Positions 3,001 to 27,219 of a stretch of 27,219 bases of DNA are shown piece after piece (position 1 is the stretch's first letter; the number at the start of each line of letters is the position of its first letter). The stretch is from NCBI GenBank assembly GCA_002269645.1, contig NIVC01000654.1, forward strand, positions 433,220 through 460,438, given 5' to 3'. The notes under the pieces were generated by a model. It was given only the letters and a program-made list of their open reading frames with translations. It ran no database searches and was not told the DNA's origin. A program made the translations under genes and the position numbers. The stretch is from Macrostomum lignano (lineage: Eukaryota).

Positions 3001-4053
3001 CTCTCCTCTCCTCTCCTCTACTCTCCTCTCCTCTCCTCTCCATTCCTCTCCTCTCCTCTCCTCTCCTCTCCTCTCCTCTCCTCTCCATTCCTCTCCTCTC
3101 CTCTCCTCTCTTCTCCATTCCTCTCCATTCCTCTCCTCTCCTCTCCTCTCCTCTCCTCTCCTCTCCATTCCTCTCCTCTCCATTCCTCTCCTCTCCTCTC
3201 CTCTCCTCTCCTCTCCTCTCCTCTCCTCTCCTCTCCTCTCCTCTCCTCTCCTCTCCTCTCCTCTCCTCTCCTCTCCTCTCCCTCTCTCCTCTCCTCTCCT
3301 CTCCTCTCCTCTCCATTCCTCTCCTCTCCTCTCCTCTCCTCTCCTCTCCTCTCCTCTCCTCTCCTCTCCATTCCTCTCCTCTCCTCTGCTCTCCTCTCCT
3401 CTCCTCTCCATTCCTCTCCTCTCCTCTCCTCTCCTCTCCTCTCCTCTCCTCTCCTCTCCTCTCCTCTCCTATCCATTCCTCTCCTCTCCTCTCCTCTCCT
3501 CTCCTCTCCTCTCCATTCCTCTCCTCTCCTCTCCTCTCCTCTCCTCTCCTCTCCTCTCCTCTCCTCTCCTCTCCTCTCCTCTCCATTCCTCTCCTCTCCA
3601 TTCCTCTCCTCTCCTCTCCTCTCCTCTCCTCTCCTCTCCTCTCCTCTCCTCTCCTCTCCATTCCTCTCCTCTCCTCTGCTCTCCTCTCCTCTCCTCTCCA
3701 TTCCTCTCCTCTCCTCTTCTCTCCTCTCCTCTCCTCTCCATTCCTCTCCTCTCCTCTCCTCTCCTCTCCTCTCCTCTCCTCTCCTCTCCATTCCTCTCCT
3801 CTCCTCTGCTCTCCTCTCCTCTCCTCTCCATTCCTCTCCTCTCCTCTCTCTCCTCTCCTCTCCTCTCCTCTCCTCTCCTCTCCATTCCTCTCCTCTCCTC
3901 TCCTCTCCTCTCCTCTCCTCTCCATTCCTCTCCTCTCCTCTCCTCTGCTCTCCTCTCCTCTCCTCTCCTCTCCTCTCCATTCCTCTCCTCTCCTCTCCTC
4001 TGCTCTCCTCTCCTCTCCTCTCCATTCCTCTCCTCTCCATTCCTCTCCTCTCC
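1..4053. repeat. (TCTCC)n pentanucleotide satellite with CCATT, CTACT, CTGCT and CTTCT variants; runs off the left edge
   Basis: About 4 kb of almost pure pyrimidines on the + strand. It produces the ERRGE-type ORFs in the track. Confidence 0.98.
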
Positions 4054-4301
4054 TAGTTTATTTCTAAGAAAATCGAGTTTATAGCGTCAAGCGCCTAGAT
4101 GAGGAAGGAGGCTCCGAGACTCAAGCCTCACTTCAGCACTGAATTCCCGGTTCATAACGCTGTTGGCGTACCTGCTGCCTATGAATTATAAATGAGCTGC
4201 TGCTGCGCTATTTCATCGTTCCCTCTAAGCTGCGGGATTTAAAGTACAAAATAATTTGGCGTTTATTGTCTAAGCACCATCAATGGAAAAAGTTGAGTTT
4301 T

Positions 4302-4800
4302 CTGGCGCCCCTTGTTGCTGGCGCCCCTTGGTGCTGGCGCCCCTTGTTGCTGGCGCCCCTTGTTGCTGGCGCCCCTTGGTGCTGGCGCCCCTTGGTGCTG
4401 GCGCCCCTTGTTGATGGCGCCCCTTGTTGCTGGCGCCCCTTGGTGCTGGCGCCCCTTGGTGCTGGCGCCCCTTGGTGCTGGCGCCCCTTGGTGCTGGCGC
4501 CCCTTGGTGCTGGCGCCCCTTGGTGCTGGCGCCCCTTGGTGCTGGCGCCCCTTGGTGCTGGCGCCCCTTGGTGCTGGCGCCCCTTGGTGCTGGCGCCCCT
4601 TGGTGCTGGCGCCCCTTGGTGCTGGCGCCCCTTGGTGCTGGGGCCCCTTGGTGCTGGCGCCCCTTGGTGCTGGCGCCCCTTGGTGCTGGCGCCCTTGGTG
4701 CTGGCGCCCCTTGGTGCTGGCGCCCCTTGGTGCTGGCGCCCCTTGGTGCTGGCGCCCCTTGGTGCTGGCACCCCTTGGTGCTGGCGCCCATTGGTGCCCC
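4302..4800. repeat. 16-bp minisatellite GGCGCCCCTTGGTGCT, about 31 copies
   Basis: Direct tandem copies; early units read TTGTT instead of TTGGT. Confidence 0.97.
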
Positions 4801-4888
4801 TTAGTGCATCAATCTAATGCTCTTGATCAATAGCGCCCAGTCGATAGCGCCCCCAATAAAACGGCGCCTTCCAAAATAAGTACCTTTA

Positions 4889-5378
4889 TGGGCGCCCCTG
4901 TCTCTAAGTGGGCGCCCCTGCCCCCTTAGTGGGCGCCCCTGCCTCTTAGTGGGCGCCCCTGCCCCTTAGTGGGCGCCCCTGCCCCTTAGTGGGCGCCCCT
5001 GCCTCTTAGTGGGCGCCCCTGCCCCTTAGTGGGCGCCCCTGCCTCTTAGTGGGCGCCCCTGCCCCTTAGTGGGCGCCCCTGCCTCTTAGTGGGCGCCCCT
5101 GCCCCTTAGTGGGCACCCCTGCCTTTTAGTGGGCGCCCCTGCCTCTTAGTGGGCGCCCCTGCCTCTTAGTGGGCGCCCCTGCCCCTTAGTGGGCACCCCT
5201 GCCTCTTAGTGGGCGCCCCTGCCCTTTAGTGGGCACCCCTGCCTCTTAGTGGGCGCCCCTTCCCCTTAGTGGGCACCCCTGCCTCTTAGTGGGCGCCCCT
5301 GCCTCTTAGTGGGCGCCCCTGCCTCTTAGTGGGCGCCCCTTCCCCTTAGTGGGCGCCCCTGCCCCCTTAGTGGGCGCC
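4889..5378. repeat. 20-bp minisatellite GGGCGCCCCTGCC(T/C)CTTAGT, about 24 copies
   Basis: Direct tandem copies sharing the GGCGCCCCT core with the 16-bp array. Confidence 0.97.
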
Positions 5379-5545
5379 TCTGTTTCGTCTCACCTCCAGC
5401 AAAAAAATCACGACAAAAGGAAATGCGCTTTTTAACTAAACTGTGTCCAGGTACAATGTGTAACAATGTATTACGTAACTAAAAGCTTGGTTTACAATGT
5501 TTATGAAGTAAATTGAGTCCATGCAAAATTCATATAATGTATTAA

Positions 5546-5853: not shown

Positions 5854-7379
5854 CTGGAAGAATTACCGCCCTAAGCACTGCATGCAGCATATATTATAAG
5901 ACTTTGAGAAATTGGAGAAAGAAAATTTACAATCCATAAGTTGTACAGTCGAGACAGTGCAGCAACAGCCGATCCACCCCCCAATCTATTAGGATATTTT
6001 ATCGATCAATCTCTATAGCAATTTTCCATATCCGCCATATGGCGCAGTGCATGTACGAGTTCTGCATATCGTGTGTGCTGCATGAGAGCGCTACTTTTAC
6101 ACGTAAAATTGTTTCGGGGCAGATCAAGTTTAGTCGAGGGCTTAAGCTTCCGTCTCAGTTTAAGCTATAACTATAGCTATACACATGTACATGTAATAGG
6201 TATCATGTAGGTACGCGTGTATGGATCACTAAAATCCAGTGAAGAATGCGGGGATCTTGTGACGCCCGCGCGGTCTTGAAAAGTTTATTTATTCAAAAGC
6301 TTTTTATAATTTGTTCTTAAAACAAACTCTTAAAAATAACCTGCGCATTAGACATCAGTCGTTTTGTTTTGGGAAAACATGCACGCTAGTACTGTACATG
6401 TGATCGAGTGCCCACAGCGCCAAGCTGAGTTTCTGCGATGCTAAAAGTGCCTGCGGCGCCAAAATGAGAGCCATATATGCGCAGCTCCAAAAATTAGCAA
6501 AGACAATTTTTCGTTATTTATTAATAATCCCCCAACAATGGAATCCATGGCGGTCTCCTTGTATTAAGCATACAGGACAGCTGCATGTGTGTTTGCATGC
6601 ATAATGTATGTACATTGTGTATTGAAATTTCGTATAAATAATTAATGTGTACGTGTAGAGTATACATGTAGGACCTAATTGGACCACTAAAAGATGCCAT
6701 CATTGTATCAGTAGAACGCAACACTCGTACATGTAAATAGGCAAAAGTAGAATGTATTTTTTGAAGGCAAGCATCGCTATAAATACAAAAGTAAAACGGG
6801 CCTTCAAATAAAAACGCCTCCGTCGAATCGCGCTTCACACAATCAAAACCGCGGCCATTGAGGTTAGAATTTTTTAACATTAACGTTCACTAAATTGGGT
6901 TGATACACTATTCAAACTGAATTGAAGGTATAAAACTTATTACATGTACAAGGCATGCATGAGCGGGGAAATTAAATTGCGTCGACACGGATATCTTATA
7001 GCTACACTTAATTATAAAGTCGATCGTCATTGAAAATCAACTTCTAAAGCAGCTTCGAAATAACTTGTAAAATCGATGGTAAATGCTACACAGATTCGAA
7101 TGAATACAAACCCAGTAGACCAAGGACTCTCTGTTGTCTTGGGCTTTTGCGCGCCATGGGGTGTGAAATTACATGATAACCATATGCAGTTATACATGCA
7201 TGTACAACCGATGGGCCAAATTTCGTGCACTATAGCAGCCCCGATAGCAGCAAATAATTTTAGCCACCCGCCACCACGGAACTGAACATGGGTTCGATGC
7301 TGAGCTGAGCTAATTCGCTAAAACGCTTTACATTATCACAATATACTAAATCTCTAAGGTTTGTCTGTCTGATATAATG

Positions 7380-7912
7380 GGGCGCTTCATAAGACCTAAA
7401 TTTCACAACGCCTAAAGCACATGACTTCATATCACCTAAATTTCATAACGCCTAAATTTCTTCACAACGCCTAAAATCGAAAATGCAGCCTCCTTCACAA
7501 CGCCTAAATTTCACATCGCCTAAATTTCACAACGCCTAAAATTTCTGCACGCTCCTTCACATCGCCTAAATTTCATATCGCCTAAATTTCACGCCTAAAA
7601 ATCTGCATGCTCTTTCATATCGCCTAAACTTCATATCGCCTAAATTTCACGACACCAAAAACTGAATGTGAAGGAGAGAAGCAAAGATTTTAGGCGTTGT
7701 GAAATTTAGGCGATATGAAATTTAGGCGATGTGAAGGAGGCTGCACTCTTTGATTTTAGGCGTTGTGAAATTTAGGCGATATGAAATTTAGGCGATGTGA
7801 AAGAGCGTGCAAATATTTTAGGCGTTTTGAAATTTAGGCGATATGAAATTTAGGCGTTGTGAAGTTTGGTGGTTTTAGGCGCTGTGAAATTTAGGTCTTA
7901 TGAAAGCGTCCC
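7380..7912. mobile_element. Non-autonomous Foldback/MULE-like DNA transposon with long modular inverted arms
   Basis: Left end GGGCGCTTCATAAGACCTAAATTTCAC; right end reverse complement GGGACGCTTTCATAAGACCTAAATTTCAC. Arms built from 15-bp CGCCTAAATTTCAYA subunits. Exact 9-bp direct repeat GATATAATG at 7371-7379 and 7913-7921. No coding capacity. Confidence 0.88.
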
Positions 7913-10287
7913 GATATAATGTCTTAGTATCAAATACGATTTTTGATAGTTTGAGCCTTTTATCAATGTTTTAGTCGTTTTAATGTCAATGCGATTTTTT
8001 GCTTCATGTATTTTATTATTAAAATAGATACTTTTATACTTATAGTGTCGAGATAAGGATATACTTTGTTAATACGATTGCAGTTTAAATGTAATAGAAA
8101 ATATATTATTTCTTACACTCTCTATACTATACTCTAGGTCTTATACTTATAAACGTTGGTCATTACCATTATGTTTACATTCTGTGCTCTCCGGAGGGGG
8201 CTGATTGGCTTAGTACCTTTTGTATAAACAATTTTTGTAAGTTCGTGGTACCTGAAGGGGTCAACTTGTCCACAACCCCTGCCTGAAGGGGGTCTAACAT
8301 GGCTAGTTATATTCTAGTAATAATTTCAAGTAGGCCTAGAGTTACACCCGTTGTTTACTAATGTCTGAAATTCTTTAAATGATATAAATATATAACAAAT
8401 CTTACGATGTGGCCTATCTACAAACATTAAATAGTGATAGCTAGAGTATCTTTATAGGCCTAAAACTCAGAAAATGAAATGAAGTTGGGCCAGATGCCCA
8501 GATCGTTATGCCTAGGCCTATGCTATGGTATCGTGTAGGCCTAATCGTGTACGGCCTAGTTAATTAAGTGCTTTCAACTGTCAGTCATCCGCCACCTGTA
8601 AAGTTGCAGTACTGGTCTGTATAGGCCTAACCCATGCGCAACCTCTGAACTTACTCTGGCTGTGCGACTTTTGGCTGAAAATAGGAAATTCGACTTACCC
8701 TAGGCCTAGTTTTGTTGAACAAAAGTGCTTAGTTTTGCGACTTTGTCTACCCATATCGTTTGACTTTTGTGCCTTTGACTTGTATTAAATTGTCATATTT
8801 GGTCATTGCTCAAATTTTTAGTTCAAGGCAATGACCTCTGCATTGACTAGGCCTAGGGCTAGGCCTAGCCATTTTTAAGCAGAATTTAGGCCTATCATAT
8901 TGGTCCTATGCTGATAATCCAATTTTATTCATATAGATCCATATCAATAATTTTAAGCTTATTCCCACAGTAGCTTTTTGGAATAGAGAACCTTAAAATG
9001 AATCTGTTAAAAAAACCATTTATTTGTTTTCACTGGTTTACAAATCTTCTAAATAAACTATTGAAAACTGAATAGTATTGAGTAGGCCTACTTTGTTAAA
9101 AATTTTTGGTCATTTAAAGGGTTAATTTTAAATATTTGCTTAGCTATCTGCTTTGCTTAGAATGACCAACTAGACCATAAGATTGGGGCAAATGAGACTT
9201 GCAAAATTTAAAATTCAATATGTAATAATAAATAATAATAATGACGATATCAATTTACCATCAGTACACAAAACTTAACACAAAAAAATTGTACAATCTT
9301 AATTATGCAGATAAGCTGAAAATTATTGACATGGATTTGTGTGGATAGAATTAGAATTATTGGCAGTCTTAGCCAGTCTATAGACTTGAATAGTGCTAGC
9401 TATTTCAAAAAGCTGCCATGGGGATAAGTTGGAAATTATTAACATGGATTCATATTGATAAAATTAGAATCATTGACATGGGACTATGGGGATAAACACT
9501 TCTAAAATAAAAATCCATGGACATTTTTCCCTAGGAGCACTTTATATATCTAGTGCCTAGAACAAAAAATTGACCAAGAGAGGTATATAAAGCAGTAGAT
9601 TTTTTGTAAGAAAGAACAATAATATTGTTGATATTAGATTTAAATATAGCAATGATTAAATTGGCACCCATATTAATTACCAAAGCTCCCCCAAGGCCAA
9701 AGAAGGGATTTTTTAATTATATTTTGTATATACATTTAGTTTTTTTATTAATATAAATTGCAAGAGTTAGGTTATTTCTTTAGGACAAATTTTACCTTGG
9801 ATTTTGTCTTAATATAGAAAGCTATAGCATTGCTATTGCCTTGAATTCTCTTGTTGTGAGTTTTATGAAAGTAAAACGACTAACTAAATAAGAGAATATT
9901 TATATCAGAGCTAAATTGAAAAGAGCAAGAGAAATAGTAGTAAGAAGGTATAGGGCCCAAACCAATATATTTAGAAAACCAACTTAAGGAGACGAGTTGA
10001 GCCTAGAATAAAATGAAAGAAGTGGAATGTGCAAATAAAAAGACACAAAATGGAGAGCCAATCAGATAGCAAGGAAGAGAAAGAGGAATAGCAAGGTTGA
10101 ACTAGACAAAGAGAAAAAAGAAAGTAAACAAAGAAAAGTGATGGTGGACTAAAGAAATGACTATAAAAAGTGCAATAGTAAAGGGTTTTTCCCATAGACA
10201 AAAAAGTAAAAATTTACAATCAATGAAAGTTTAGAGTAATAAAATTTATTAAAAGTCAGTTTAAGGCAATGGTCTAATAGGATTGCC

Positions 10288-11479: not shown

Positions 11480-11716
<237 letters not shown>

Positions 11717-11950
11717 TGAGTCTTCCAGGTTATTGCCTGTTGGGATGTAATTTGATGAGTTGGCTTTTGCTTCATATTTCAGCTCGTATAAATTATATTA
11801 GAACATATTCATATACTGACGTTTAATGCTAATGCAATGTCAAAGCATGACTGGGTATTAGATAATTTTGCATTTTTAGGATATATTCAAGATTATGATG
11901 TACTTGAGAATATTATCTTAGGATAATTTTTAAGTTTTGATATATTTCAC

Positions 11951-12165
11951 ATCATTGGAATATTTGAAATCACTGGGATATCTGAAATCACTGGGATATC
12001 TGAGATCACTGAGATATCTGAGATCACTGGGATATCTGAGATCACTGAGATATCTGAGATCACTGGGATATCTGAGATCACTGAGATATCTGAGATCCCT
12101 GGGATGCTTGAAATCACTGGGATATCTGAGATCACTGGGATATCTAAAACCACTGGGATACTTGA
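11951..12165. repeat. 18-bp minisatellite TGA(A/G)ATCACTG(G/A)GATATC in Rab14 intron 1
   Basis: About 11-12 tandem copies. Confidence 0.93.
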
Positions 12166-12625: not shown

Positions 12626-12665
12626 TAAGTTACTCTGCAGTGAGAATAGGTGTTGAGATTTTAGA

Positions 12666-14555
12666 GTTTTAAGCAGCCATAATCAGCTGATTAATTGAGC
12701 AAAACTATTGGCAGTTTTGAGCAGCCACAATCAGCTGATTAATTGAACAGAACTATTGGCAGTTTTGAGCAGCCACAATCAGCTGATTAATTGAGCAGAA
12801 CTATTGGCAGTTTTGAGCAGCCATAATCAGCTGATTAATTGAACAGAACTATTGGCAGTTTTGAGCAGCCATCCCACAATCAGCTGATTAATTGAGCAGA
12901 ACTATTGGCAGTTTTGAGCAGCCATCCCACAATCAGCTGATTAATTGAACAGAACTATTGGCAGTTTTGAGCAGCCACAATCAGCTGATTAATTGAGCAG
13001 AACTATTGGCAGTTTTGAGCAGCCATAATCAGCTGATTAATTGAACAGAACTATTGGCAGTTTTGAGCAGCCATCCCACAATCAGCTGATTAATTGAGCA
13101 GAACTATTGGCAGTTTTGAGCAGCCACAATCAGCTGATTAATTGAACAGAACTATTGGCAGTTTTGAGCAGCCATCCCACAATCAGCTGATTAATTGAAC
13201 AGAACTATTGGCAGTTTTGAGCAGCCACAATCAGCTGATTAATTGAACAGAACTATTGGCAGTTTTGAGCAGCCATCCCACAATCAGCTGATTAATTGAG
13301 CAGAACTATTGGCAGTTTTGAGCAGCCACAATCAGCTGATTAATTGAACAGAACTATTGGCAGTTTTGAGCAGCCATCCCACAATCAGCTGATTAATTGA
13401 GCAGAACTATTGGCAGTTTTGAGCAGCCATAATCAGCTGATTAATTGAGCAGAACTATTGGCAGTTTTGAGCAGCCACAATCAGCTGATTAATTGAACAG
13501 AACTATTGGCAGTTTTGAGCAGCCATAATCAGCTGATTAATTGAGCAGAACTATTGGCAGTTTTGAGCAGCCACAATCAGCTGATTAATTGAACAGAACT
13601 ATTGGCAGTTTTGAGCAGCCATCCCACAATCAGCTGATTAATTGAGCAGAACTATTGGCAGTTTTGAGTAGCCATCCCACAATCAGCTGATTAATTGAGC
13701 AGAACTATTGGCAGTTTTGAGCAGCCACAATCAGCTGATTAATTGAACAGAACTATTGGCAGTTTTGAGCAGCCATCCCACAATCAGCTGATTAATTGAG
13801 CAGAACTATTGGCAGTTTTGAGCAGCCACAATCAGCTGATTAATTGAACAGAACTATTGGCAGTTTTGAGCAGCCATCCCACAATCAGCTGATTAATTGA
13901 GCAGAACTATTGGCAGTTTTGAGCAGCCACAATCAGCTGATTAATTGAACAGAACTATTGGCAGTTTTGAGCAGCCATAATCAGCTGATTAATTGAACAG
14001 AACTATTGGCAGTTTTGAGCAGCCATAATCAGCTGATTAAATGCGCAGAACTATTGGCAGTTTTGAGCAGCCATCCCACAATCAGCTGATTAATTGAACA
14101 GAACTATTGGCAGTTTTGAGCAGCCATAATCAGCTGATTAATTGAACAGAACTATTGGCAGTTTTGAGCAGCCATAATCAGCTGATTAATTGAACAGAAC
14201 TATTGGCAGTTTTGAGCAGCCATAATCAGCTGATTAATTGAACAGAACTATTGGCAGTTTTGAGCAGCCATAATCAGCTGATTAATTGAGCAGAACTATT
14301 GGCAGTTTTGAGCAGCCATAATCAGCTGATTAATTGAACAGAACTATTGGCAGTTTTGAGCAGCCATAATCAGCTGATTAATTGAACAGAACTATTGGCA
14401 GTTTTGAGCAGCCATAATCAGCTGATTAATTGAACAGAACTATTGGCAGTTTTGAGCAGCCATAATCAGCTGATTAATTGAACAGAACTATTGGCAGTTT
14501 TGAGCAGCCATAATCAGCTGATTAATTGAGCAGAACTATTGGCAGTTTTGAGCAG
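12666..14555. repeat. 48/53-bp minisatellite filling Rab14 intron 2, about 38 copies
   Basis: Unit CAGCTGATTAATTGA(G/A)CAGAACTATTGGCAGTTTTGAGCAGCCA(C/T)AAT; the 53-bp variant reads GCCATCCCACAAT. Confidence 0.97.
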
Positions 14556-16995: not shown

Positions 16996-17918
16996 ATAGT
17001 GAAGGTAATTAGCTTCGATATCATTGAGCACTCGAGTGTATAGATAGTGAAGGTAATTAGCTTCGATATCATTGAGCACTCGGGTATATAGATAGTGAAG
17101 GTAATTAGCTTCGATATCATTGAGCACTCGAGTGTATAGATAGTGAAGGTAATTAGCTCCGATATCATTAAGCACTCGGGTATATAGATAGTGAAGGTAA
17201 TTAGCTCCGATATCATTAAGCACTCAGGTATATAGATAGTGAAGGTAATTAGCTCCGATATCATTAAGCATTCGGGTATATAGATAGTGAAGGTAATTAG
17301 CTTCGATATCATTAAGCATTCGGGTATATAGATAGTGAAGGTAATTAGCTCCGATATCATTAAGCACTCGAGTGTATATATAGTGAAGGTAATTAGCTTC
17401 GATATCATTAAGCACTCGAGTGTATATATAGTGAAGGTAATTAGCTTCGATATCATTAAGCACTCAGGTATATAGATAGTGAAGGTAATTAGCTTCGATA
17501 TCATTAAGCACTCGAGTGTATAGATAGTGAAGGTAATTAGCTTCGATATCATTGAGCACTCGAGTGTATAGATAGTGAAGGTAATTAGCTTCGATATCAT
17601 TGAGCATTCAAGAATATAGATAGTGAAGGTAATTAGCTCCGATATCATTGAGCATTCAAGAATATAGATAGTGAAGGTAATTAGCTCCGATATCATTAAG
17701 CATTCAAGAATATAGATAGTGAAGGTAATTAGCTCCGATATCATTAAGCACTCGGGTATATAGATAGTGAAGGTAATTAGCTCCGATATCATTAAGCATT
17801 CGGGTATATAGATAGTGAAGGTAATTAGCTCCGATATCATTAAGCATTCAGGTATATAGATAGTGAAGGTAATTAGCTCCGATATCATTAAGCACTCGGG
17901 TATATAGATAGCGAGGTA
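16996..17918. repeat. 48-bp minisatellite just upstream of EXD3, about 19 copies
   Basis: Unit TAGATAGTGAAGGTAATTAGCT(T/C)CGATATCATT(G/A)AGCACTCG(A/G)GT(G/A)TA. Confidence 0.97.
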
Positions 17919-17987
17919 AAAAGTTATACAGATTCCCTTATGAGCAAGGCACCTGCTCGTTATTTCAGCCAGTTCGAGCTATCAATC

Positions 17988-18374
17988 ATGTCTAGTCGAT
18001 TTGTATGCGACGCCGGAGACGACTCAGACGAGTATTATTACGAATCAGATTCGGACGATGATTACTGCGGTCGATTGGTGCCGCAGCAGCATGGAGTCGC
18101 CTCCAGCTCAAGCTGGCAATCCAGACTGGCCTATGTGCCGAAATACCGCGGCGGTTTCAGCGGCGCAGGAATCACCCGAGTTGACGACTCAACCACAAAG
18201 CAGCCGACCTCGCGAGCCGGCGTATCAGCCGACGAGATGAGAGCGGCAAGGGAGCGAGCCAGAAATCTGCTGTCGGATTTGGACGAATCCGCTCGAAGGA
18301 CAGCCTATGCCGAGCCAATCTCCAGGGACTGGATGCAGGAGGCTGAGGGATGGCGGCGACAGTTGGAGAATCAG
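17988..18374 (+). CDS. EXD3: EXD3/mut-7-like exonuclease, probable coding exon 1
   Basis: GC-rich open frame MSSRFVCDAGDDSDEYYYESDSDDD...WRRQLENQ. Donor CAG|GTTGGT, phase 0, matches the phase-0 exon at 23964. Alternative in-frame ATG at 17940. Assigned to EXD3 by splice compatibility, not homology. Confidence 0.65.
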
Positions 18375-18427
18375 GTTGGTGCTGGGATGCCAATGAGGAC
18401 TTATTGTACGATTATTGAACTCCCGTA

Positions 18428-18860
18428 TTGAGATCCCGTATGTCATAGATTGAGATCCCATCTGTCATAGATTGAGATCCCATCTGTCATAGATTGAGAT
18501 CCCATCTGTCATAGATTGAGATCCCATCTGTCATACATTGAGATCCCATCTGTCATACATTGAGATCCCATCTGTCATAGATTGAGATCCCATCTGTCAT
18601 AGATTGAGATCCCGTCCGGCAAAGATTGAGATCCCATCCGGCACAGATTAAGATCCCATCCGGCAAAGATTGAGATCACATCCGGCACAGATTGAGATCC
18701 TATCCGGCACAGATTGAGATCCCATCCGGCACAGATTGAGATCCCATCTGTCACAGATTGAGATCCTATCTGTCATAGATTGAGATCCCATCTGTCATAG
18801 ATTTTGAGATCCCATCTGTCACAAATTGAGATCCCATCCGGCACAGATTGAGATCCCATC
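18428..18860. repeat. 22-bp minisatellite ATTGAGATCCCATC(TGTCATAG/CGGCACAG), left part
   Basis: Tandem copies up to the LTR; the same array resumes at 23431. Confidence 0.96.
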
Positions 18861-19057
18861 TGTAAAGTCTCAAGGCCGCGTGTTAAGCTGAGCGAGAAAA
18901 TCAAGCATGGGGCCCTAACTGGCCAGGTTAGCGATATATATATTTGAGGTTTTACGCGTACGGCGTACATGACTCATGCGACACAAGATGTACATTTATA
19001 ATATAACTCACTCGCCTATTTAGAACAAATTGATAATAATATTGCGAGGCAATTACA
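18861..19057 (-). repeat. 3' LTR, 197 bp
   Basis: Identical by eye to 23229-23430 except for lacking CAGTA. Confidence 0.96.
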
Positions 19058-19066
19058 CTTCTCCCC
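19058..19066 (-). other. Polypurine tract GGGGAGAAG
   Basis: Directly abuts the 3' LTR on the element strand. Confidence 0.85.
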
Positions 19067-19180
19067 AAAAAACGAAAAAGCTCAAAAATGCGGATTAAAA
19101 GGATAAGGAAAAAGGAATAAAACATTAAGGGTAAAAAACACTTGTCTCAGCCCTTAGCACCAGTTACCCGTCAAAACCCG

Positions 19181-22100
19181 TCAAACTCTGTAGCTGATAG
19201 GCTTGTCCTTGGCCGCTCTCGGGTGCGGCCTCTCAGCAATGCCGCGCTCCGGCGAGGCGGCGCCGGCGTCCGCTTCTGGTGGTGGGTCCTCGGTCGCTGT
19301 CAGAGGCCGGATGTGCGTCAGGTGGCGAGTGCATGTCCGGTCGCCTTGCCGCAGGACGTAGGAATCGCCTCGCCTGTCGGTGACGGTCCAGGGTTCGAGC
19401 TCGAAAGGCGTTTGAATTTTCGTGCGTCTCGTCCGCTTGCGAAGAACCGCCGAACCCGGCTTGACATTGGCTGCCTTGGCCCTCCTGGAGCGGTTGAAAC
19501 CTGCTGCCATCTGGTTGTTGTAGGCCTCGTGGCGCTTTGCGAGTTCGGCGCGGTCGTGCTGCACAGGCTGCGATGGTTGGATTGACGGGAGGCCGTCGTT
19601 GAGAGCTCGGCCCATGAGCAGTTCGGCTGGTGCCACGCCGGTTGCCGAGTGCGGAGTGACGCGATGAGCGAGCAGCCAGTCGTCGAGCGTGGTGCGCCAG
19701 TTGCGTCCTTCTGCGATGGCCGCTCTGATGACCTTGTTGATGCACCTGTTGACTCGCTCGGTCGCTCCGTTCGCCTCGGGGTGCAGCGGACAGATCCGGC
19801 GATGCTTGATGCCGAACTCTGAGAGGAAGTTTGTGAATTCTGCCGAGTTAAACGGAGGTCCATTGTCGCTGACGATTTCCAACGGGATGCCGTATCTGCT
19901 AAACAGAGTCCGGAGATGCGGAAGCACTGCCTCTGCTGATGTTGAGCTGACTATGTCGACCTCGGGAAATTTTGAAAACAGATCGGTTGTCACCAGGAGC
20001 ATTTTCCCTTGGACTGGGCCGTAAAAGTCCATTCCAAGAACCAGCCATGCTCCGTCCGGAAGTTGCGACGGTGAGAGTGGTGGCGGTGCGAGGCTCTTCG
20101 GCGATGTCGCTTGGCAGGGAAGGCAAGACTGGACGAACGCCTGGCAGTCGCTTCTCATCGCTGGCCACCAGACTTTGGTTTGCAGTCTGTCCATAGTTTT
20201 TCGGCAGCATTGGTGGCCTGCATGTGCCAGCTGGAGCACCGTCCGACGTAAGCTGCTCGGGATCACGATCAACGAGCTCCGTAGTAGCACGCCGTCATGT
20301 TCTGAAAGCTCCTGCTGCAGGCAGGACAAGGCTCGCAGTTCTCTGTTCTGCTTGTCCCATTGGCCAGTTCGTAGAGCTGATAGAGCTGCTTGGATCGTGC
20401 CGTCTGACTTTGAAGCCTCCTGAATTGTTGCAAAGTTCAGTCCTTTCGGAGTAGAGCCGATGGCGACTGCGTTGATGAAGCGTCTGTCCAGGAGTTCCCC
20501 GGGGTTGTCCTTTGTCTGCATTTCAGGTTGTCTACTGAGGACATCCGCTGGATTCTGTGGCCCCGGCTGATAGATGAGCTTGAATTTGAGGTGCTGCACT
20601 CTTAAAGCCATCCGTTCAATCCTTGGTGGAGGCCTGGAACCAGGTTGAAAAAGCGGGACTAATGGGCGGTGATCCGTGATGACTGTGAGATCTGGGCAGC
20701 CGCTGAGGTAGTGCTCGAAACGTAGGCACCCGAATTTCACCGCAAGCGCCTCGCGTTCAATTTGGGCGTATCGCTGCTCAACTGGCGTGAGCGACCTGCT
20801 GGCGAAGGCGACCGGTTTGCGAACGCCTTTCTCATCCACCTGGCTGAGAATGGCACCCAGGCCGACTGGTGAGGCGTCCACATGAACTTCTGTTGGGAGA
20901 TTCACGTCAAAGAAGGCCAGGACGCTCTCCTTGCAGATCGCTGCTCTTGTTTGCAGGAATGCTTCTTGTTGCCTTTCTGACCAGCACCATTTATGACCTT
21001 TTTTTAACAGTTCTCGCATTGGCTGCGTCAGATCTGAGAAGTTCGGAACGAACCTGGACAGGTAGGTGGCCAAACCGAGGAATGAGCGCAGCTCTGACAC
21101 ATTTGTTGGCTCCTTAAAGTCTTTGACGGCCTTGATCTTCTCGGCTGCAGGCTGAACGCCTCGTGCGCTGATGCGCATACCAAGAAAATCGATGAAAGGC
21201 TGTGCCAGGCGACACTTGTTCGGGTTGAGTGTGATTCCATGGTCTTGTAGGCGCTTGAAGCACTGTTTTAGTCGGATGTTGTGCTCTTCCATCGTGCTCG
21301 CAAAGACGGTGATGTCATCGTGTGCCCATCGGACACCGTCAAGGCCGCTCAGGACGCCTGTCATAACCCTTTGCAATATCTCGGATGCGTTGGTGAATCC
21401 CATGCTGAGTCTGGTCAGTCGCATGAGACCCAGTGGGGTGCTGAAGGTGAAGACGTGACGGGATTTCGGTTTGACAAGAATTTGGTGGAAAGCCTTTACG
21501 ATGTCGAGCTCGCTGAATACCGTGGAACCCGCCATTTCGTCCGTGATCTCTTCAAAGGTTGGGATGGGCTGCTTTTCTGGCACGGCAAATGAGTTGACGT
21601 CGCGCAGGTCTTGGCAGATGCGGATGCCACCGCCTTCTTTCGGGACGACAACCATGCGGGAGACCCACGGTGACGGGCCGTTGACGCGCTCGATGATTCT
21701 TTGGTCGAGGAGAGCCTGAAGTTCCGCGATGACCGCCGACCGCTGGTGGACGGGAACTCTGGAGGGTGGGTGACAGACTGGGACAGCTTCTGGTCGAAGA
21801 CGAACGTCGACCTCGACGCCCTTAACGCAGCCAAGGCCTTCGAAGATTGACTGAAACTCACCAAGGATGCTGCTGATGCGGAGTTCGGTTGGAAGATCTT
21901 GGTCGACATCTCTGTACTTGGAGAACAGCTCTTGAATACCTGATGCGGCTAGATTTTCCGTGGGCTGCACCGAGTTGACTTCAACTGTTGGATGTTGGAT
22001 GTGCAGAATTCCCATGTTGAAAGCGGTTTCTCGACCGAGTAGTGTGGTTCCACAGCCTTTGGTGATGTAGAATGAAGCTAGTTGTCTGCTAGCTGCGGTG

Positions 22101-23191
22101 CTCACGTTGAGGTCAGCGACACCCAGGACTTGGAGAGGCGTTGTGGACCCGTAGCTGAAAATTGGATGGATGGCGCTGCGCAGTCGAACATTTCTTAGCC
22201 GCCGGAAGTTCTCCTCGCTCATGACGTTGCAACTGGCTCCACTACCCACGAGTACGATGAAGTCCTTGCCCTCGATCCTCAGATTAGTGTTGGCGGAGTT
22301 GCGTCTAGGTGCCGTTTTTTGCGACTGGATAGTGAAGGCCTCCTCATTTAGCGAATCGTGATCGATGAAGACCTCCTCAGCTTCTTTGTCCGCTACGGCG
22401 TTGATGCTGGAGCTTGTTTGAGGCCTGCGTTGTCTGCATGCTTTGGCGAGATGGTTTGGCTTGCCGCATGCCAGGCAGGTTTTGCCTTTTGCCGCGTTGC
22501 ATGAGCTGTGCCCGCGTTCGCCGCATCGATAGCAGCTGGTTGGGCCGCTGTTTGCTTGGCCGCCAGGGACCCGCTGACTGTTCGGGCGCGTTCCGCTGTC
22601 TCTGAACTGCTTCGGTGCCGCTCTGTGCACTGCTGCGATGCTACTGGAGTTCTCAATGGCCGTGGCCTGCTCTTCTGCTGCTTCAAACGCGCGCGCTTGT
22701 CTCAACGCATCGCCGAGAGAGATGTTGGACTCCTGCAGCAATCTTCGCCGAAGTTTATCGGAGCAGCATGTCGCCACTATCTGATCTCTGATTAGGGAGT
22801 CCTTGAGTGCTGAGAACTCGCATGTCTCGGCCGCTGAGTTGAGTCGGGAGTACCAGGAGTCCACTGGCTCTCCGGTTTGCTGAACGCATAGACGAAACTG
22901 ATAGCGGCCAAATACGATGTTGTTGCGCTCCTTGAAGTGCTCTTTTATTGCTGCGAGCAGAGTTTCGAGGCTGTCTTTCTTGTCATCTGGCAGGTCTTTA
23001 ATGATTTCCGCGATTTCTCTGCCGGCCGTGTAGGCCAGGAGCTTGCACTTCTGAGTTTCGTCTTTGATGCCTGACGCTTCGATAAAGTCACAAAAATGAT
23101 CGGACCATTTGTTCCAGCGTTTACCGGCATTCTGTTGATCTGCACTAGTGCTGAATTGCTCAGGGGGTGGCAGTGAGATGAATTGAGCCAT
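19181..23191 (-). CDS. Gag-Pol polyprotein; uninterrupted ORF but protease catalytic Asp replaced by Gly
   Basis: Gag from MAQFISLPPPEQF; knuckles CYRCGERGHSSC and CLACGKPNHLAKAC; PR LVGSGASCN; RT ELDIVKAFHQ...WAHDDITV; RNase H VDASPVGLG...QIEREAL...TDHRPL; integrase AHAGHQ...CLPC, GMDFYGP, VSDNGPPF, ANGATER. The frame stays open upstream to 23368, inside the LTR. Confidence 0.95.
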   Translation of the reverse strand: MAQFISLPPPEQFSTSADQQNAGKRWNKWSDHFCDFIEASGIKDETQKCKLLAYTAGREIAEIIKDLPDDKKDSLETLLAAIKEHFKERNNIVFGRYQFRLCVQQTGEPVDSWYSRLNSAAETCEFSALKDSLIRDQIVATCCSDKLRRRLLQESNISLGDALRQARAFEAAEEQATAIENSSSIAAVHRAAPKQFRDSGTRPNSQRVPGGQANSGPTSCYRCGERGHSSCNAAKGKTCLACGKPNHLAKACRQRRPQTSSSINAVADKEAEEVFIDHDSLNEEAFTIQSQKTAPRRNSANTNLRIEGKDFIVLVGSGASCNVMSEENFRRLRNVRLRSAIHPIFSYGSTTPLQVLGVADLNVSTAASRQLASFYITKGCGTTLLGRETAFNMGILHIQHPTVEVNSVQPTENLAASGIQELFSKYRDVDQDLPTELRISSILGEFQSIFEGLGCVKGVEVDVRLRPEAVPVCHPPSRVPVHQRSAVIAELQALLDQRIIERVNGPSPWVSRMVVVPKEGGGIRICQDLRDVNSFAVPEKQPIPTFEEITDEMAGSTVFSELDIVKAFHQILVKPKSRHVFTFSTPLGLMRLTRLSMGFTNASEILQRVMTGVLSGLDGVRWAHDDITVFASTMEEHNIRLKQCFKRLQDHGITLNPNKCRLAQPFIDFLGMRISARGVQPAAEKIKAVKDFKEPTNVSELRSFLGLATYLSRFVPNFSDLTQPMRELLKKGHKWCWSERQQEAFLQTRAAICKESVLAFFDVNLPTEVHVDASPVGLGAILSQVDEKGVRKPVAFASRSLTPVEQRYAQIEREALAVKFGCLRFEHYLSGCPDLTVITDHRPLVPLFQPGSRPPPRIERMALRVQHLKFKLIYQPGPQNPADVLSRQPEMQTKDNPGELLDRRFINAVAIGSTPKGLNFATIQEASKSDGTIQAALSALRTGQWDKQNRELRALSCLQQELSEHDGVLLRSSLIVIPSSLRRTVLQLAHAGHQCCRKTMDRLQTKVWWPAMRSDCQAFVQSCLPCQATSPKSLAPPPLSPSQLPDGAWLVLGMDFYGPVQGKMLLVTTDLFSKFPEVDIVSSTSAEAVLPHLRTLFSRYGIPLEIVSDNGPPFNSAEFTNFLSEFGIKHRRICPLHPEANGATERVNRCINKVIRAAIAEGRNWRTTLDDWLLAHRVTPHSATGVAPAELLMGRALNDGLPSIQPSQPVQHDRAELAKRHEAYNNQMAAGFNRSRRAKAANVKPGSAVLRKRTRRTKIQTPFELEPWTVTDRRGDSYVLRQGDRTCTRHLTHIRPLTATEDPPPEADAGAASPERGIAERPHPRAAKDKPISYRV

Positions 23192-23208
23192 GAGTGACTG
23201 GACAAAGT

Positions 23209-23227
23209 GGGCTTGCTTGCGACGCCA
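23209..23227 (-). other. Primer-binding site TGGCGTCGCAAGCAAGCCC
   Basis: Starts 1 nt after the 5' LTR with TGG, complementary to a tRNA CCA end. The implied tRNA 3' end (...GCGACGCCA, discriminator G) is tRNA-Ser-like; that identity is inference. Confidence 0.75.
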
Positions 23228-23228
23228 C

Positions 23229-23430
23229 TGTAAAGTCTCAAGGCCGCGTGTTAAGCTGAGCGAGAAAATCAAGCATGGGGCCCTAACTGGCCAGGTTAGC
23301 GATATATATACAGTATTTGAGGTTTTACGCGTACGGCGTACATGACTCATGCGACACAAGATGTACATTTATAATATAACTCACTCGCCTATTTAGAACA
23401 AATTGATAATAATATTGCGAGGCAATTACA
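23229..23430 (-). repeat. 5' LTR, 202 bp
   Basis: TG...CA ends; TATAAA on the - strand at 23373-23368; extra CAGTA at 23311-23315. Confidence 0.96.
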
Positions 23431-23920
23431 CCATCCGGCACAGATTGAGATCACATCCGGCACAGATTGAGATCCCATCCGGCACAGATTGAGATCCCAT
23501 CCGGCACAGATTGAGATCCCATTCGGCAAAGATTGAGATCCCATCTGTCACAGATTGAGATCCCATCCGGCACAGATTGAGATCGTATCTGTCATAGATT
23601 GAGATCCCATCCGGCAAAGATTGAGATCCCATCTGTCACAGATTGAGATCCCATCCGGCACAGATTGAGATCCTATCTGTCATAGATTGAGATCCCATCC
23701 GGCAAAGATTGAGATCCCATCTGTCACAGATTGAGATCCCATCCGGCACAGATTGAGATCCTATCTGTCATAGATTGAGATCCCATCTGTCACAGATTGA
23801 GATCCCATCCGGCACAGATTGAGATCCTATCTGTCACAGATTGAGATCCCATCCGGCACAGATTGAGATCCCATCTGTCACAGATTGAGATCCCATCCGG
23901 CAAAGATTGAGATCCCATCT
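23431..23920. repeat. 22-bp minisatellite, right part
   Basis: Same unit as 18428-18860. Confidence 0.96.
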
Positions 23921-24442: not shown

Positions 24443-24990
24443 TTCCCTGTCTCCCTTCTCTCCCTTCTCCCTGTCTCCCTTCTCTCCCTTCTCCCTGTCT
24501 CCCTTCTCTCCCTTCTCCCTGTCTCCCTTCTCTCCCTTCTCCCTGTCTCCCTTCTCTCCCTTCTCCCTGTCTCCCTTCTCTCCCTTCTCCCTGTCTCCCT
24601 TCTCTCCCTTCTCCCTGCCTCCCTTCTCTCCTTCTCCCTGCCTCCCTTCTCTCCCTTCTCCCTGCCTCCCTTCTCTCCCTTCTCCCTGTCTCCCTTCTCT
24701 CCCTTCTCCCTGCCTCCCTTCTCTCCCTTCTCCCTGTCTCCCTTCTCTCCCTTCTCCCTGCCTCCCTTCTCTCCCTTCTCCCTGTCTCCCTTCTCTCCCT
24801 TCTCCCTGTCTCCCTTCTCTACTTTCTCCACTTTCTCCCCCTTCTTCCCTTCTCTCGCTCTCCCACTTCTCCCCCATCTCTCCTTTCTCCCTTCTCCCCC
24901 TCTCTCTTCTCCTCCCTCTTCTTCTCTTCTCCTTTCTCTCGCTTCTCCCCTTTTGTTTTCCTTGTCCGTTTTCTATCCTTTTTTCTCCCT
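24443..24990. repeat. 24-bp CT-rich minisatellite TTCTCCCTG(T/C)CTCCCTTCTCTCCC, decaying into a pyrimidine tract after about 24820
   Basis: Tandem copies in EXD3 intron 2. Confidence 0.92.
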
Positions 24991-25492: not shown

Positions 25493-25519
25493 GTGAGTTG
25501 CTGCTGCGTGTCTTATTAT

Positions 25520-25538
25520 CTGTCCTGTCCTGTCTGTC

Positions 25539-25633
<95 letters not shown>

Positions 25634-25636
25634 TAG

Positions 25637-25669
<33 letters not shown>

Positions 25670-25700
25670 TGGTGTCTGTCTGTCTGTCTGTCTGTCTTAG

Positions 25701-25763
<63 letters not shown>

Positions 25764-25790
25764 GTCTGTCTGTCTGTCTGTCTGTCTTAG

Positions 25791-25839
<49 letters not shown>

Positions 25840-25925
25840 TAGTGTCTGTCTGTCTGTCTGTCTGTCTTGGTGTCTGTCTGTCTGTCTGTCTGTCTTAGTG
25901 TCTGTCTGTCTGCTGTCTGTCTTAG

Positions 25926-25982
<57 letters not shown>

Positions 25983-26054
25983 TAGTGTCTGTCTGTCTGT
26001 CTGTCTGTTAGTCTGTCTGTCTTAGTTGTCTGTCTTTTAGTCTGTCTGTCTTAG

Positions 26055-26087
<33 letters not shown>

Positions 26088-26762: not shown

Positions 26763-26819
26763 TTATTTATCTGCGTCAATAGTTCTATGAAGTCTTCTTG
26801 TCTGCAATAAGTTACACAG

Positions 26820-27219
26820 GTTCATTGTCAGGTCAGCTCGGGTCACGCAGGTTCCTTCTTCAGGTCAGGCTCGGGTCACGCAGGTTCCTTGTCAGGTCAG
26901 CTCGGGTCACGCAGGTTCCTTGTCAGTCAGCTCGGGTCACGCAGGTTCCTTGTCAGGTCAGCTCGGTCACCAGGTTCCTTGTCAGGTCAGCGTCGGGTCA
27001 CGCAGGTTCCTTGTCAGGTCAGCTCGCACGCAGAGTCAGCGTCAGCTCAGGTCACGCGAGTCAGCAGTCAGGTCAGCTCGGGTCACGCAGAGTCAGGTCA
27101 GCTCGGGTCAGCTCAGGTCACGCGAGTCAGCAGTCGGGTCAGCTCGGTCACGCAGAGTCAGTCAGCTCGGGTCAGCTCAGGTCACGCGGAGTCAGCAGTC
27201 GGGTCAGCTCGGGTCACGC
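26820..27219. repeat. About 31-bp minisatellite CAGGTCAGCTCGGGTCACGCAGGTTCCTTGT, degenerating toward the right edge
   Basis: Tandem copies with many small indels, in EXD3 intron 4. Confidence 0.9.

What the first reader, a model, noticed from the sequence alone, without database searches (positions are those of the whole stretch)
23309..23315. Tc1/mariner-type excision footprint (TACAGTA) is the only difference between the two LTRs
The 3' LTR reads GATATATATA-TTTGAGG and the 5' LTR reads GATATATATA-CAGTA-TTTGAGG. A 5-bp gain giving TA-CAG-TA is the canonical footprint of Sleeping Beauty-type Tc1 elements (3 nt of transposon end plus a duplicated TA), and (AT)n runs are their preferred target. 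LTRs are normally identical at integration and these show no substitutions, so a DNA transposon apparently jumped in and out again very recently. That implies a currently or recently active Tc1-like transposase in this genome. It also supports reading the TACATGTA and TAGGCCTA clusters as accumulated footprints.
Basis: partly seen in the sequence, partly recalled or inferred. Interest (0 to 1): 0.75.

Follow-up and report, generated by a model that had tools for sequence, protein, structure and literature searches.

The report
Five-base difference between retrotransposon LTRs
A young, intact gypsy-type retrotransposon has two end repeats that differ only by five bases. The difference looks exactly like the scar of a Tc1/Sleeping-Beauty-type transposon, but this one case cannot be told apart from an ordinary small deletion with the data available.

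Summary
A 4,570-bp Ty3/gypsy-type LTR retrotransposon lies on the minus strand at 18861-23430. It sits in a 22-bp satellite and has a perfect 5-bp target duplication (CCATC). Its LTRs (197 and 202 nt) have no substitutions. They differ only by 5 nt, so the 5' LTR reads TA-CAG-TA (23309-23315) where the 3' LTR reads TA (18941-18942).

This is exactly a canonical Sleeping Beauty footprint, and the TA has an SB-favoured context (ATATATTT, fitting ANNTANNT).

The interpretation stays unproven:
- The direction of the change cannot be set, because no other copy of the family was found in any collection. The closest protein relative is 58% identical.
- The same pair of sequences would result from a 5-bp deletion between the two TAs in the 3' LTR.
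- TACWGTA is not enriched in the window (3 found, 1.46 expected).
- The window holds no TA-CAG...CTG-TA element and no Tc1 transposase remnant.

My estimates: ordinary small indel about 0.45, true Tc1-type footprint about 0.3, reverse-transcription slip about 0.1, and artefact or conversion from a family variant about 0.15. Reading the TACATGTA and TAGGCCTA clusters as accumulated footprints is not supported. Interest is low to moderate.

The parts
18427..18860 (.). Left part of the 22-bp satellite array into which the retrotransposon inserted
   Evidence: TRF reports period 22 and 19.8 copies. The array matches the array at 23431-23919.
18856..18860 (.). Target-site duplication, left copy (CCATC)
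   Evidence: Joining the two flanks restores the 22-bp unit CGGCACAGATTGAGATCCCATC in phase.
18861..19057 (-). 3' LTR (197 nt, TGT...ACA on either strand): the short allele
   Evidence: Alignment A1. It is identical to the 5' LTR minus 5 nt.
18941..18942 (.). The single TA in the 3' LTR that corresponds to TA-CAG-TA in the 5' LTR. It is the last TA of the TA run in GATATATATATTTGAGG.
19058..19066 (-). Polypurine tract GGGGAGAAG directly upstream of the 3' LTR (sense strand)
   Evidence: Read (plus strand cttctcccc). The assignment is inferred from its position.
19181..23191 (-). Uninterrupted gag-pol ORF. The likely start is the ATG at 23191. The mechanical ORF runs up to 23368, inside the 5' LTR. 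Domain order: gag with zinc knuckle, weak aspartyl protease, RT, RNase H, integrase.
   Evidence: Pfam hits: zf-CCHC, RVT_1 (2.8e-13), RT_RNaseH_2 (8.7e-30), Integrase_H2C2 (4.3e-12), rve (6e-13). The protease hit is only sub-threshold (E = 0.0096).
23215..23227 (-). Candidate primer-binding site TGGCGTCGCAAGC, 1 nt after the 5' LTR
   Evidence: Read. The cognate tRNA was not identified, and there is no tRNA gene in the window.
23229..23430 (-). 5' LTR (202 nt): the long allele
23309..23315 (.). TACAGTA heptamer. The 5-nt difference can be placed at 23309-23313, 23310-23314 or 23311-23315.
23368..23373 (-). TATAAA in the 5' LTR (sense strand), about 55-65 nt upstream of the indel. If it is the promoter TATA box, the indel lies in R/U5.
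   Evidence: Read. The function is inferred, not tested.
23431..23435 (.). Target-site duplication, right copy (CCATC)
23431..23919 (.). Right part of the 22-bp satellite array
   Evidence: TRF reports period 22 and 22.2 copies.

Best explanation
The feature is the only difference between the two LTRs of a young, apparently intact Ty3/gypsy-type retrotransposon. The element spans 18861-23430 on the minus strand and has a 5-bp target duplication inside a 22-bp satellite. The single most likely cause, though not more likely than not, is an ordinary small indel beside the short TA run of the LTR. On this reading the family LTR originally read (TA)4-CAG-TA, and the 3' LTR lost 5 bp between the two TA dinucleotides by replication slippage or microhomology-mediated end joining. 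The match to a Tc1 footprint would then be a coincidence.

Shown: the anatomy of the element, the identity of the LTRs, the 2-bp microhomology, and the lack of any other Tc1 sign in the window. Inferred: the direction of the change and the mechanism.
For: The two alleles differ by exactly the 5 nt bounded by a TA direct repeat, which gives three equivalent placements. That is the signature of slippage or microhomology deletion. The indel abuts a TA run, a sequence type prone to small indels (general knowledge). In most animals small deletions outnumber insertions (general knowledge). No cognate transposon end pair was found in the window. No Tc1 transposase remnant was found. TACWGTA is not enriched (3 against 1.46 expected).
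Against: The coincidence needed is large. Only about 4.8% of LTR-like 202-mers contain TACWGTA at all. Only 1 of 149 distinct 5-bp deletions of the long LTR gives the short one, or 1 of the 11 with at least 2 bp of microhomology. A 5-bp change is not a multiple of the 2-bp unit, so it is not simple TA-repeat slippage. A run of four or five TA units is short for a slippage hot spot. By my rough estimate, an unspecific indel would take this exact form with a probability of about 1e-4 or less. The explanation therefore rests mainly on the low prior rate of transposon footprints compared with ordinary indels.
Confidence: 0.45

Rival explanations
1. Tc1/mariner-type (Sleeping Beauty-like) excision footprint. 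A cut-and-paste element with CAG...CTG ends inserted at the last TA of the TA run in the 5' LTR and duplicated that TA. It later excised with 3-nt staggered cuts, and end joining left TA-CAG-TA.
For: The sequence matches a canonical SB footprint exactly (TACAGTA or TACTGTA; PMC6943129; 10.1101/659086). The short allele has a single TA at the site. The target context ATATATTT fits ANNTANNT and 7 of 8 positions of ATATATAT (PMC8934666). A non-duplicative 5-nt gain is unusual for ordinary insertions. The likelihood of this exact form is far higher under this hypothesis than under an unspecific indel (numbers).
Against: The direction of the change is unknown. No cognate element, inverted-repeat pair or transposase remnant was found in the 27-kb window. 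TACWGTA is not in excess in the window, and none occurs in the roughly 14 kb of satellite units. It requires both an insertion and an excision within about 400 bp during the short life of an element with zero LTR substitutions. The host and its transposon content are unknown. Many Tc1/mariner families leave other footprints, of 2 or 4 nt or with other end sequences (general knowledge; non-canonical SB footprints).
Confidence: 0.3
2. The LTRs already differed at integration because of a reverse-transcriptase error. In the standard model the 5' LTR descends from plus-strand strong-stop DNA. The plus strand of the 3' LTR is a second, independent copy of the same minus-strand template. A slip between the two TAs in one of these syntheses would therefore give one long and one short LTR.
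For: This follows from the established strand-transfer model and from the known tendency of reverse transcriptases to delete between short direct repeats (general knowledge). The 2-bp direct repeat and the absence of any substitution fit a difference present from the start.
Against: The per-cycle probability of such an error in 200 nt is small, roughly 1e-3 or less by my estimate from published retroviral error rates. It needs the same coincidence with the footprint form as the best explanation. It was not testable here.
Confidence: 0.1
3. The difference was imported or is not real. The family may have two LTR variants, with one LTR of this copy converted by ectopic gene conversion or by an intermolecular plus-strand transfer between co-packaged RNAs. 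Alternatively, assembly or polishing may have placed reads from another copy onto one LTR.
For: Two near-identical 200-nt repeats 4.4 kb apart inside satellite DNA are a hard target for assembly and polishing (general knowledge).
Against: No second copy or variant was seen anywhere. A clean CAGTA gain is not a typical sequencing-error pattern. The target duplication and satellite phase fit a single simple insertion, although CCATC recurs in most units, so this is weak evidence.
Confidence: 0.15

Closest known systems
Canonical Sleeping Beauty / Tc1-like excision footprint (TACAGTA or TACTGTA)
   Same: The 7-bp sequence is identical. It is flanked by the duplicated TA. The other allele has a single TA. 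The net change is 5 bp. The target context is TA-rich and fits ANNTANNT.
   Different: No donor element, transposase or inverted repeat was identified. The derived state is not established. It is a single instance with no enrichment of the motif.
Ty3/gypsy (Metaviridae) LTR retrotransposons. The named relatives are annotated 'Transposon Tf2-9 polyprotein' or 'K02A2.6-like' in cnidarians, molluscs and the flatworm Macrostomum lignano.
   Same: TG...CA LTRs, a 5-bp target duplication, a polypurine tract, a TGG-type primer-binding site, a single gag-pol ORF in the order zinc knuckle, protease, RT, RNase H, integrase, and no env.
   Different: The element is compact (4.57 kb, LTRs about 200 nt). 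The RT-RNase H region is at most 58-63% identical to anything in the protein collection. It is therefore an undescribed family from a genome not represented there.
Microhomology-mediated small deletion, or removal of an interruption beside a microsatellite by slippage
   Same: A 5-bp loss bounded by a 2-bp direct repeat, directly next to a TA run. The short allele is a perfect run (ATATATATAT).
   Different: The direction is not shown. The size is not a multiple of the repeat unit, and the run is short.

Membership tests
Tc1/mariner excision footprint (SB type) | TA target dinucleotide present once in the unmodified allele and twice, flanking the extra bases, in the modified allele | tested here: met
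   The 3' LTR reads ...ATATATA-TA-TTTG. The 5' LTR reads ...ATATATA-TA-CAG-TA-TTTG.
Tc1/mariner excision footprint (SB type) | The bases between the TAs equal the terminal 3 nt of the transposon (CAG or CTG) | tested here: inconclusive
   CAG matches the published canonical footprint. No cognate element from this genome is available for comparison.
Tc1/mariner excision footprint (SB type) | The longer allele is the derived state | not testable with these tools
   No other copy of the family was found. LTR patterns gave 0 hits in metagenome and viral contigs. The exact ORF products are not on record. The best protein relative is 58% identical.
Tc1/mariner excision footprint (SB type) | A cognate TA-CAG...CTG-TA element or DD34E transposase in the same genome | tested here: not met
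   Tested in this 27-kb window only. There is no such inverted-repeat pair. No Pfam family was hit in 104 ORFs outside the satellites, the retrotransposon and Rab14. The rest of the genome was not available.
Tc1/mariner excision footprint (SB type) | Excess of TACWGTA over chance, as expected if footprints accumulate | tested here: not met
   3 matches against 1.46 expected; 20 of 100 shuffles reach 3.
Ty3/gypsy LTR retrotransposon | Direct long terminal repeats ending TG...CA, flanked by a short target-site duplication | tested here: met
   197-nt and 202-nt LTRs, TGT...ACA, and a 5-bp duplication CCATC. The empty site is in phase with the 22-bp satellite.
Ty3/gypsy LTR retrotransposon | pol domain order RT, RNase H, integrase, with integrase after RT (unlike Ty1/copia) | tested here: met
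   A piecewise Pfam scan along the ORF gave zf-CCHC, RVT_1, RT_RNaseH_2 and then Integrase_H2C2 plus rve. The protease hit is only sub-threshold.
Ty3/gypsy LTR retrotransposon | Primer-binding site next to the 5' LTR and polypurine tract next to the 3' LTR | tested here: inconclusive
   GGGGAGAAG abuts the 3' LTR. TGGCGTCGCAAGC lies 1 nt after the 5' LTR. The tRNA was not identified.
Microhomology-mediated deletion | Deleted segment bounded by a short direct repeat, one copy of which is retained | tested here: met
   2-bp TA repeat and three equivalent placements. The direction (deletion or insertion) is not testable here.

The most novel reading that the evidence does not exclude
The 5 nt are a real Tc1-like excision scar inside an LTR pair with zero substitutions. 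This unannotated animal genome would then carry a cut-and-paste transposon with CAG ends that has been active within the lifetime of a very young retrotransposon copy. LTR pairs could then serve genome-wide as dated paired controls for counting transposon in-and-out events.
Probability: 0.3. Interest if true: 0.35.

Novelty: new member of a known kind. Interest (0 to 1): 0.22.

Why it matters
If the footprint reading is right, it is cheap, sequence-only evidence that a Tc1-like transposase has been active very recently in this animal genome. It would also suggest a general method: the two LTRs of a young element are identical at birth, so differences shaped like a footprint record DNA-transposon visits within a datable interval. 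If it is an ordinary deletion, nothing follows beyond the annotation of a young, probably still competent gypsy-type element in satellite DNA. Both phenomena are well known, so the value lies in annotation and method rather than in new concepts.

Tried and rejected
1. Ty1/copia was my first guess, from the 5-bp duplication and the ORF entering the LTR. It was rejected because integrase follows RT and RNase H.

2. I looked for other copies to polarise the indel, without success:
- Exact-product look-ups for the ORF starting at 23368 and at the ATG at 23191 found nothing on record. One search used a start one codon too far upstream and is void.
- Two LTR patterns in metagenome contigs gave no hits (cap reached).
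- One LTR pattern in viral contigs gave no hits.
- The RT-RNase H homology search gave at best 58-63% identity.

3. I tried to identify the host from the Rab14 exons. The best hits are about 91% identical across molluscs, echinoderms and nematodes, so the host is an animal that is not annotated in the collection. The contigs of the two closest RT relatives give only sample accessions.

I replaced it with concatenated stop-free ORFs, which hit no families.

5. A templated origin of the 5 nt (snap-back or polymerase-theta type) was considered. The only nearby match is a 6-mer, ACTGTA, at the LTR/primer-binding-site edge (23227-23232) in inverted orientation. That is expected by chance, so it is not used.

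6. A functional reading was considered. The short allele contains AATATA, a possible poly(A) hexamer, and the long one does not. The 5 nt also put the LTR ATGs in frame with gag. Both points are speculative and carry no weight.

7. A literature search for TAGGCCTA returned nothing relevant.

Full report
**What is there.**
GATATATATATTTGAGG is at 18933-18949 and GATATATATACAGTATTTGAGG is at 23301-23322. They belong to a direct repeat pair with no mismatch and a single 5-nt gap. The exact limits are 18861-19057 (197 nt) and 23229-23430 (202 nt), and both copies run TGT...ACA. Deleting 5 nt from the longer copy reproduces the shorter one exactly. Because TA stands on both sides, the 5 nt can be placed in three equivalent ways, starting at 23309, 23310 or 23311.

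**The element.**
- A single uninterrupted ORF lies between the repeats on the minus strand (19181..23368).
- I scanned it in four pieces rather than as a whole. Pfam gave a zinc knuckle, RVT_1, RT_RNaseH_2, Integrase_H2C2 and rve, in that order. A sub-threshold aspartyl-protease signal lies between gag and RT.
- This order marks a Ty3/gypsy-type element, not copia. There is no env.
- GGGGAGAAG abuts the 3' LTR, and TGGCGTCGCAAGC follows the 5' LTR after 1 nt.
- CCATC flanks both ends. Joining the flanks restores the 22-bp satellite unit CGGCACAGATTGAGATCCCATC in phase. The element is therefore a clean insertion into a satellite array.
- Zero substitutions in 197 nt bounds LTR divergence at about 1.5% (95% limit, Poisson). 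This is a young copy.

**Provenance.**
- The RT-RNase H region has no close relative. The best match is 58% identical over 85% of the query, and short fragments reach 60-63%. Named relatives are from animals: Macrostomum lignano at 53%, cnidarians at about 43%.
- The window also carries two exons of a Rab14 gene (11501-11715 and 12301 to about 12624). Its best matches are about 91% identical to many different animals.
- The host is therefore a metazoan whose genome is not represented in the protein collection.
- Exact-product look-ups found nothing (one search used a wrong start codon). LTR patterns found nothing in metagenome or viral contigs.

**Does the form fit a Tc1 footprint?**
Yes, exactly. 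Canonical SB footprints are 5'-TACAGTA-3' or 5'-TACTGTA-3', that is, the terminal 3 bp of the transposon between duplicated TAs (PMC6943129; 10.1101/659086). The implied target is the last TA of the run, in the context ATATATTT. This satisfies ANNTANNT and 7 of 8 positions of the preferred ATATATAT (PMC8934666).

**How strong is that?**
- The long LTR has only three TA-NNN-TA heptamers, and one is TACWGTA.
- Only about 4.8% of sequences with this LTR's composition contain TACWGTA.
- Only 1 of 149 distinct 5-bp deletions gives the short LTR. Eleven of the 149 have at least 2 bp of microhomology.
- With a rough 4% share of 5-bp events among small indels (general knowledge), an unspecific indel takes this exact form with a probability near 1e-4 or less. 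A Tc1-like excision repaired by end joining gives it perhaps 10-40% of the time. The likelihood therefore favours the footprint by a wide margin.
- The prior runs the other way. Footprints are far rarer than ordinary indels unless a CAG-ended family is active now, and nothing here shows that it is.
- TACWGTA occurs 3 times in the window against 1.46 expected, and 20 of 100 shuffles reach 3. None is in the satellite units.
- No TA-CAG...CTG-TA inverted-repeat pair exists.
- None of 104 stop-free ORFs of at least 40 codons outside the satellites, the gypsy element and Rab14 hits any Pfam family, including transposases.
- Weighing plausible activity levels across animal genomes, I put the footprint at about 0.3. 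This is my own estimate, not a computed result.

**Alternatives.**
- *Ordinary deletion.* The same two alleles arise if the LTR originally read (TA)4-CAG-TA and the 3' LTR lost 5 bp between the TAs by slippage or microhomology-mediated joining. I rank this first at about 0.45, because such events are common and the site adjoins a TA run. It does require accepting a sizeable coincidence.
- *Reverse-transcription slip.* In the standard model the 5' LTR descends from plus-strand strong-stop DNA, and the plus strand of the 3' LTR is a second copy of the same template. A slip in one synthesis gives unequal LTRs at integration (about 0.1).
- *Imported or artefactual difference.* One LTR may have been changed by conversion, by intermolecular strand transfer from a variant family member, or by mis-polishing (about 0.15). 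Ordinary co-packaging with template switching does not give unequal LTRs, because both derive from one minus-strand U3-R-U5.

**Position within the LTR.**
On the sense strand a TATAAA lies at 23373-23368. With a start site about 30 nt downstream, the indel falls in R/U5 (inference).

Two side effects were noted, and neither is used as evidence:
- The 5 nt put the LTR ATGs at 23368 and 23350 in frame with the likely gag ATG at 23191. This is why the mechanical ORF is 1395 codons rather than 1336. The same frame in the 3' LTR stops after 26 codons.
- The short allele contains AATATA, a possible poly(A) hexamer, and the long allele lacks it.

TACATGTA (5 against 0.19 expected) and TAGGCCTA (11 against 0.45 expected) are truly enriched and clustered. 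Ten TAGGCCTA in 760 bp with unrelated flanks is too dense for independent insertion-excision cycles. The TACATGTA cluster lies in sequence rich in CATG and TGTA motifs. They need another explanation, so the footprint reading of these clusters is not supported.

**Verdict.**
The kind of event is already known in either case. The retrotransposon itself is a new member of the Ty3/gypsy group.

Noticed in passing
window 2-4054: About 810 copies of a TCCTC pentamer satellite, with occasional ATTCC variants, fill the first 4 kb. The strand asymmetry is extreme (GC skew about -0.99).
   Followed up: no
window 4302-5382, 12665-14555, 16996-17919, 24444-24949, 25519-26087, 26817-27219: The window is a mosaic of unrelated tandem arrays with periods of 16, 20, 48/101, 48, 24, 4 and 31/61 bp. 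Roughly half of the sequence is satellite.
   Followed up: no
window 11501-11715 and 12301-~12624 (+): Two exons of a Rab14 GTPase gene with GT/AG borders. The protein is about 91% identical to Rab14 of many animals. An 18-bp array (11942-12165) sits in the intron between the exons, and the 48-bp satellite starts about 40 bp after exon 2. Exon 1 uses AT-rich codons and exon 2 uses GC-rich codons. The later exons were not located.
   Followed up: partly
window ~7375-7925: A foldback-like element: two inverted arrays of a 16-bp unit (CGCCTAAATTTCACAA). Arms are up to 100 nt and 95% complementary. Perfect 14-bp inverted repeats (AGACCTAAATTTCA), each flanked by TA, lie at 7390-7900 near its ends.
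   Followed up: partly
window 8331-9090 (plus 10830): The palindromic octamer TAGGCCTA occurs 11 times against 0.45 expected, 10 of them within 760 bp. Spacing is irregular and the flanks share no similarity. The cause is unknown, and the density does not fit transposon footprints.
   Followed up: partly
window 6188-6948, 14942: TACATGTA occurs 5 times against 0.19 expected. The copies at 6188 and 6941 bound a 757-bp stretch with TA-flanked 12-of-14 inverted ends (CATGTAATAGGTAT), a possible small TA-targeting non-autonomous element. Separately, the LTR-LTR junction of the gypsy element would read ...TTTACA|TGTAAT..., which also contains TACATGTA. This is probably a coincidence.
   Followed up: partly
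window 23191-23368 (-) against 18861-18995 (-): The 5 extra bases put two ATGs inside the 5' LTR in frame with gag, adding 59 codons to the mechanical ORF. The same frame in the 3' LTR ends after 26 codons. This probably has no effect if transcription starts downstream of the TATAAA.
   Followed up: yes
window 17892-18428 (+): A 179-codon stop-free frame with an acidic, serine-rich stretch (DDSDEYYYESDSDDDY), just upstream of the 22-bp satellite. It has no Pfam match, and its origin is unknown.
   Followed up: partly
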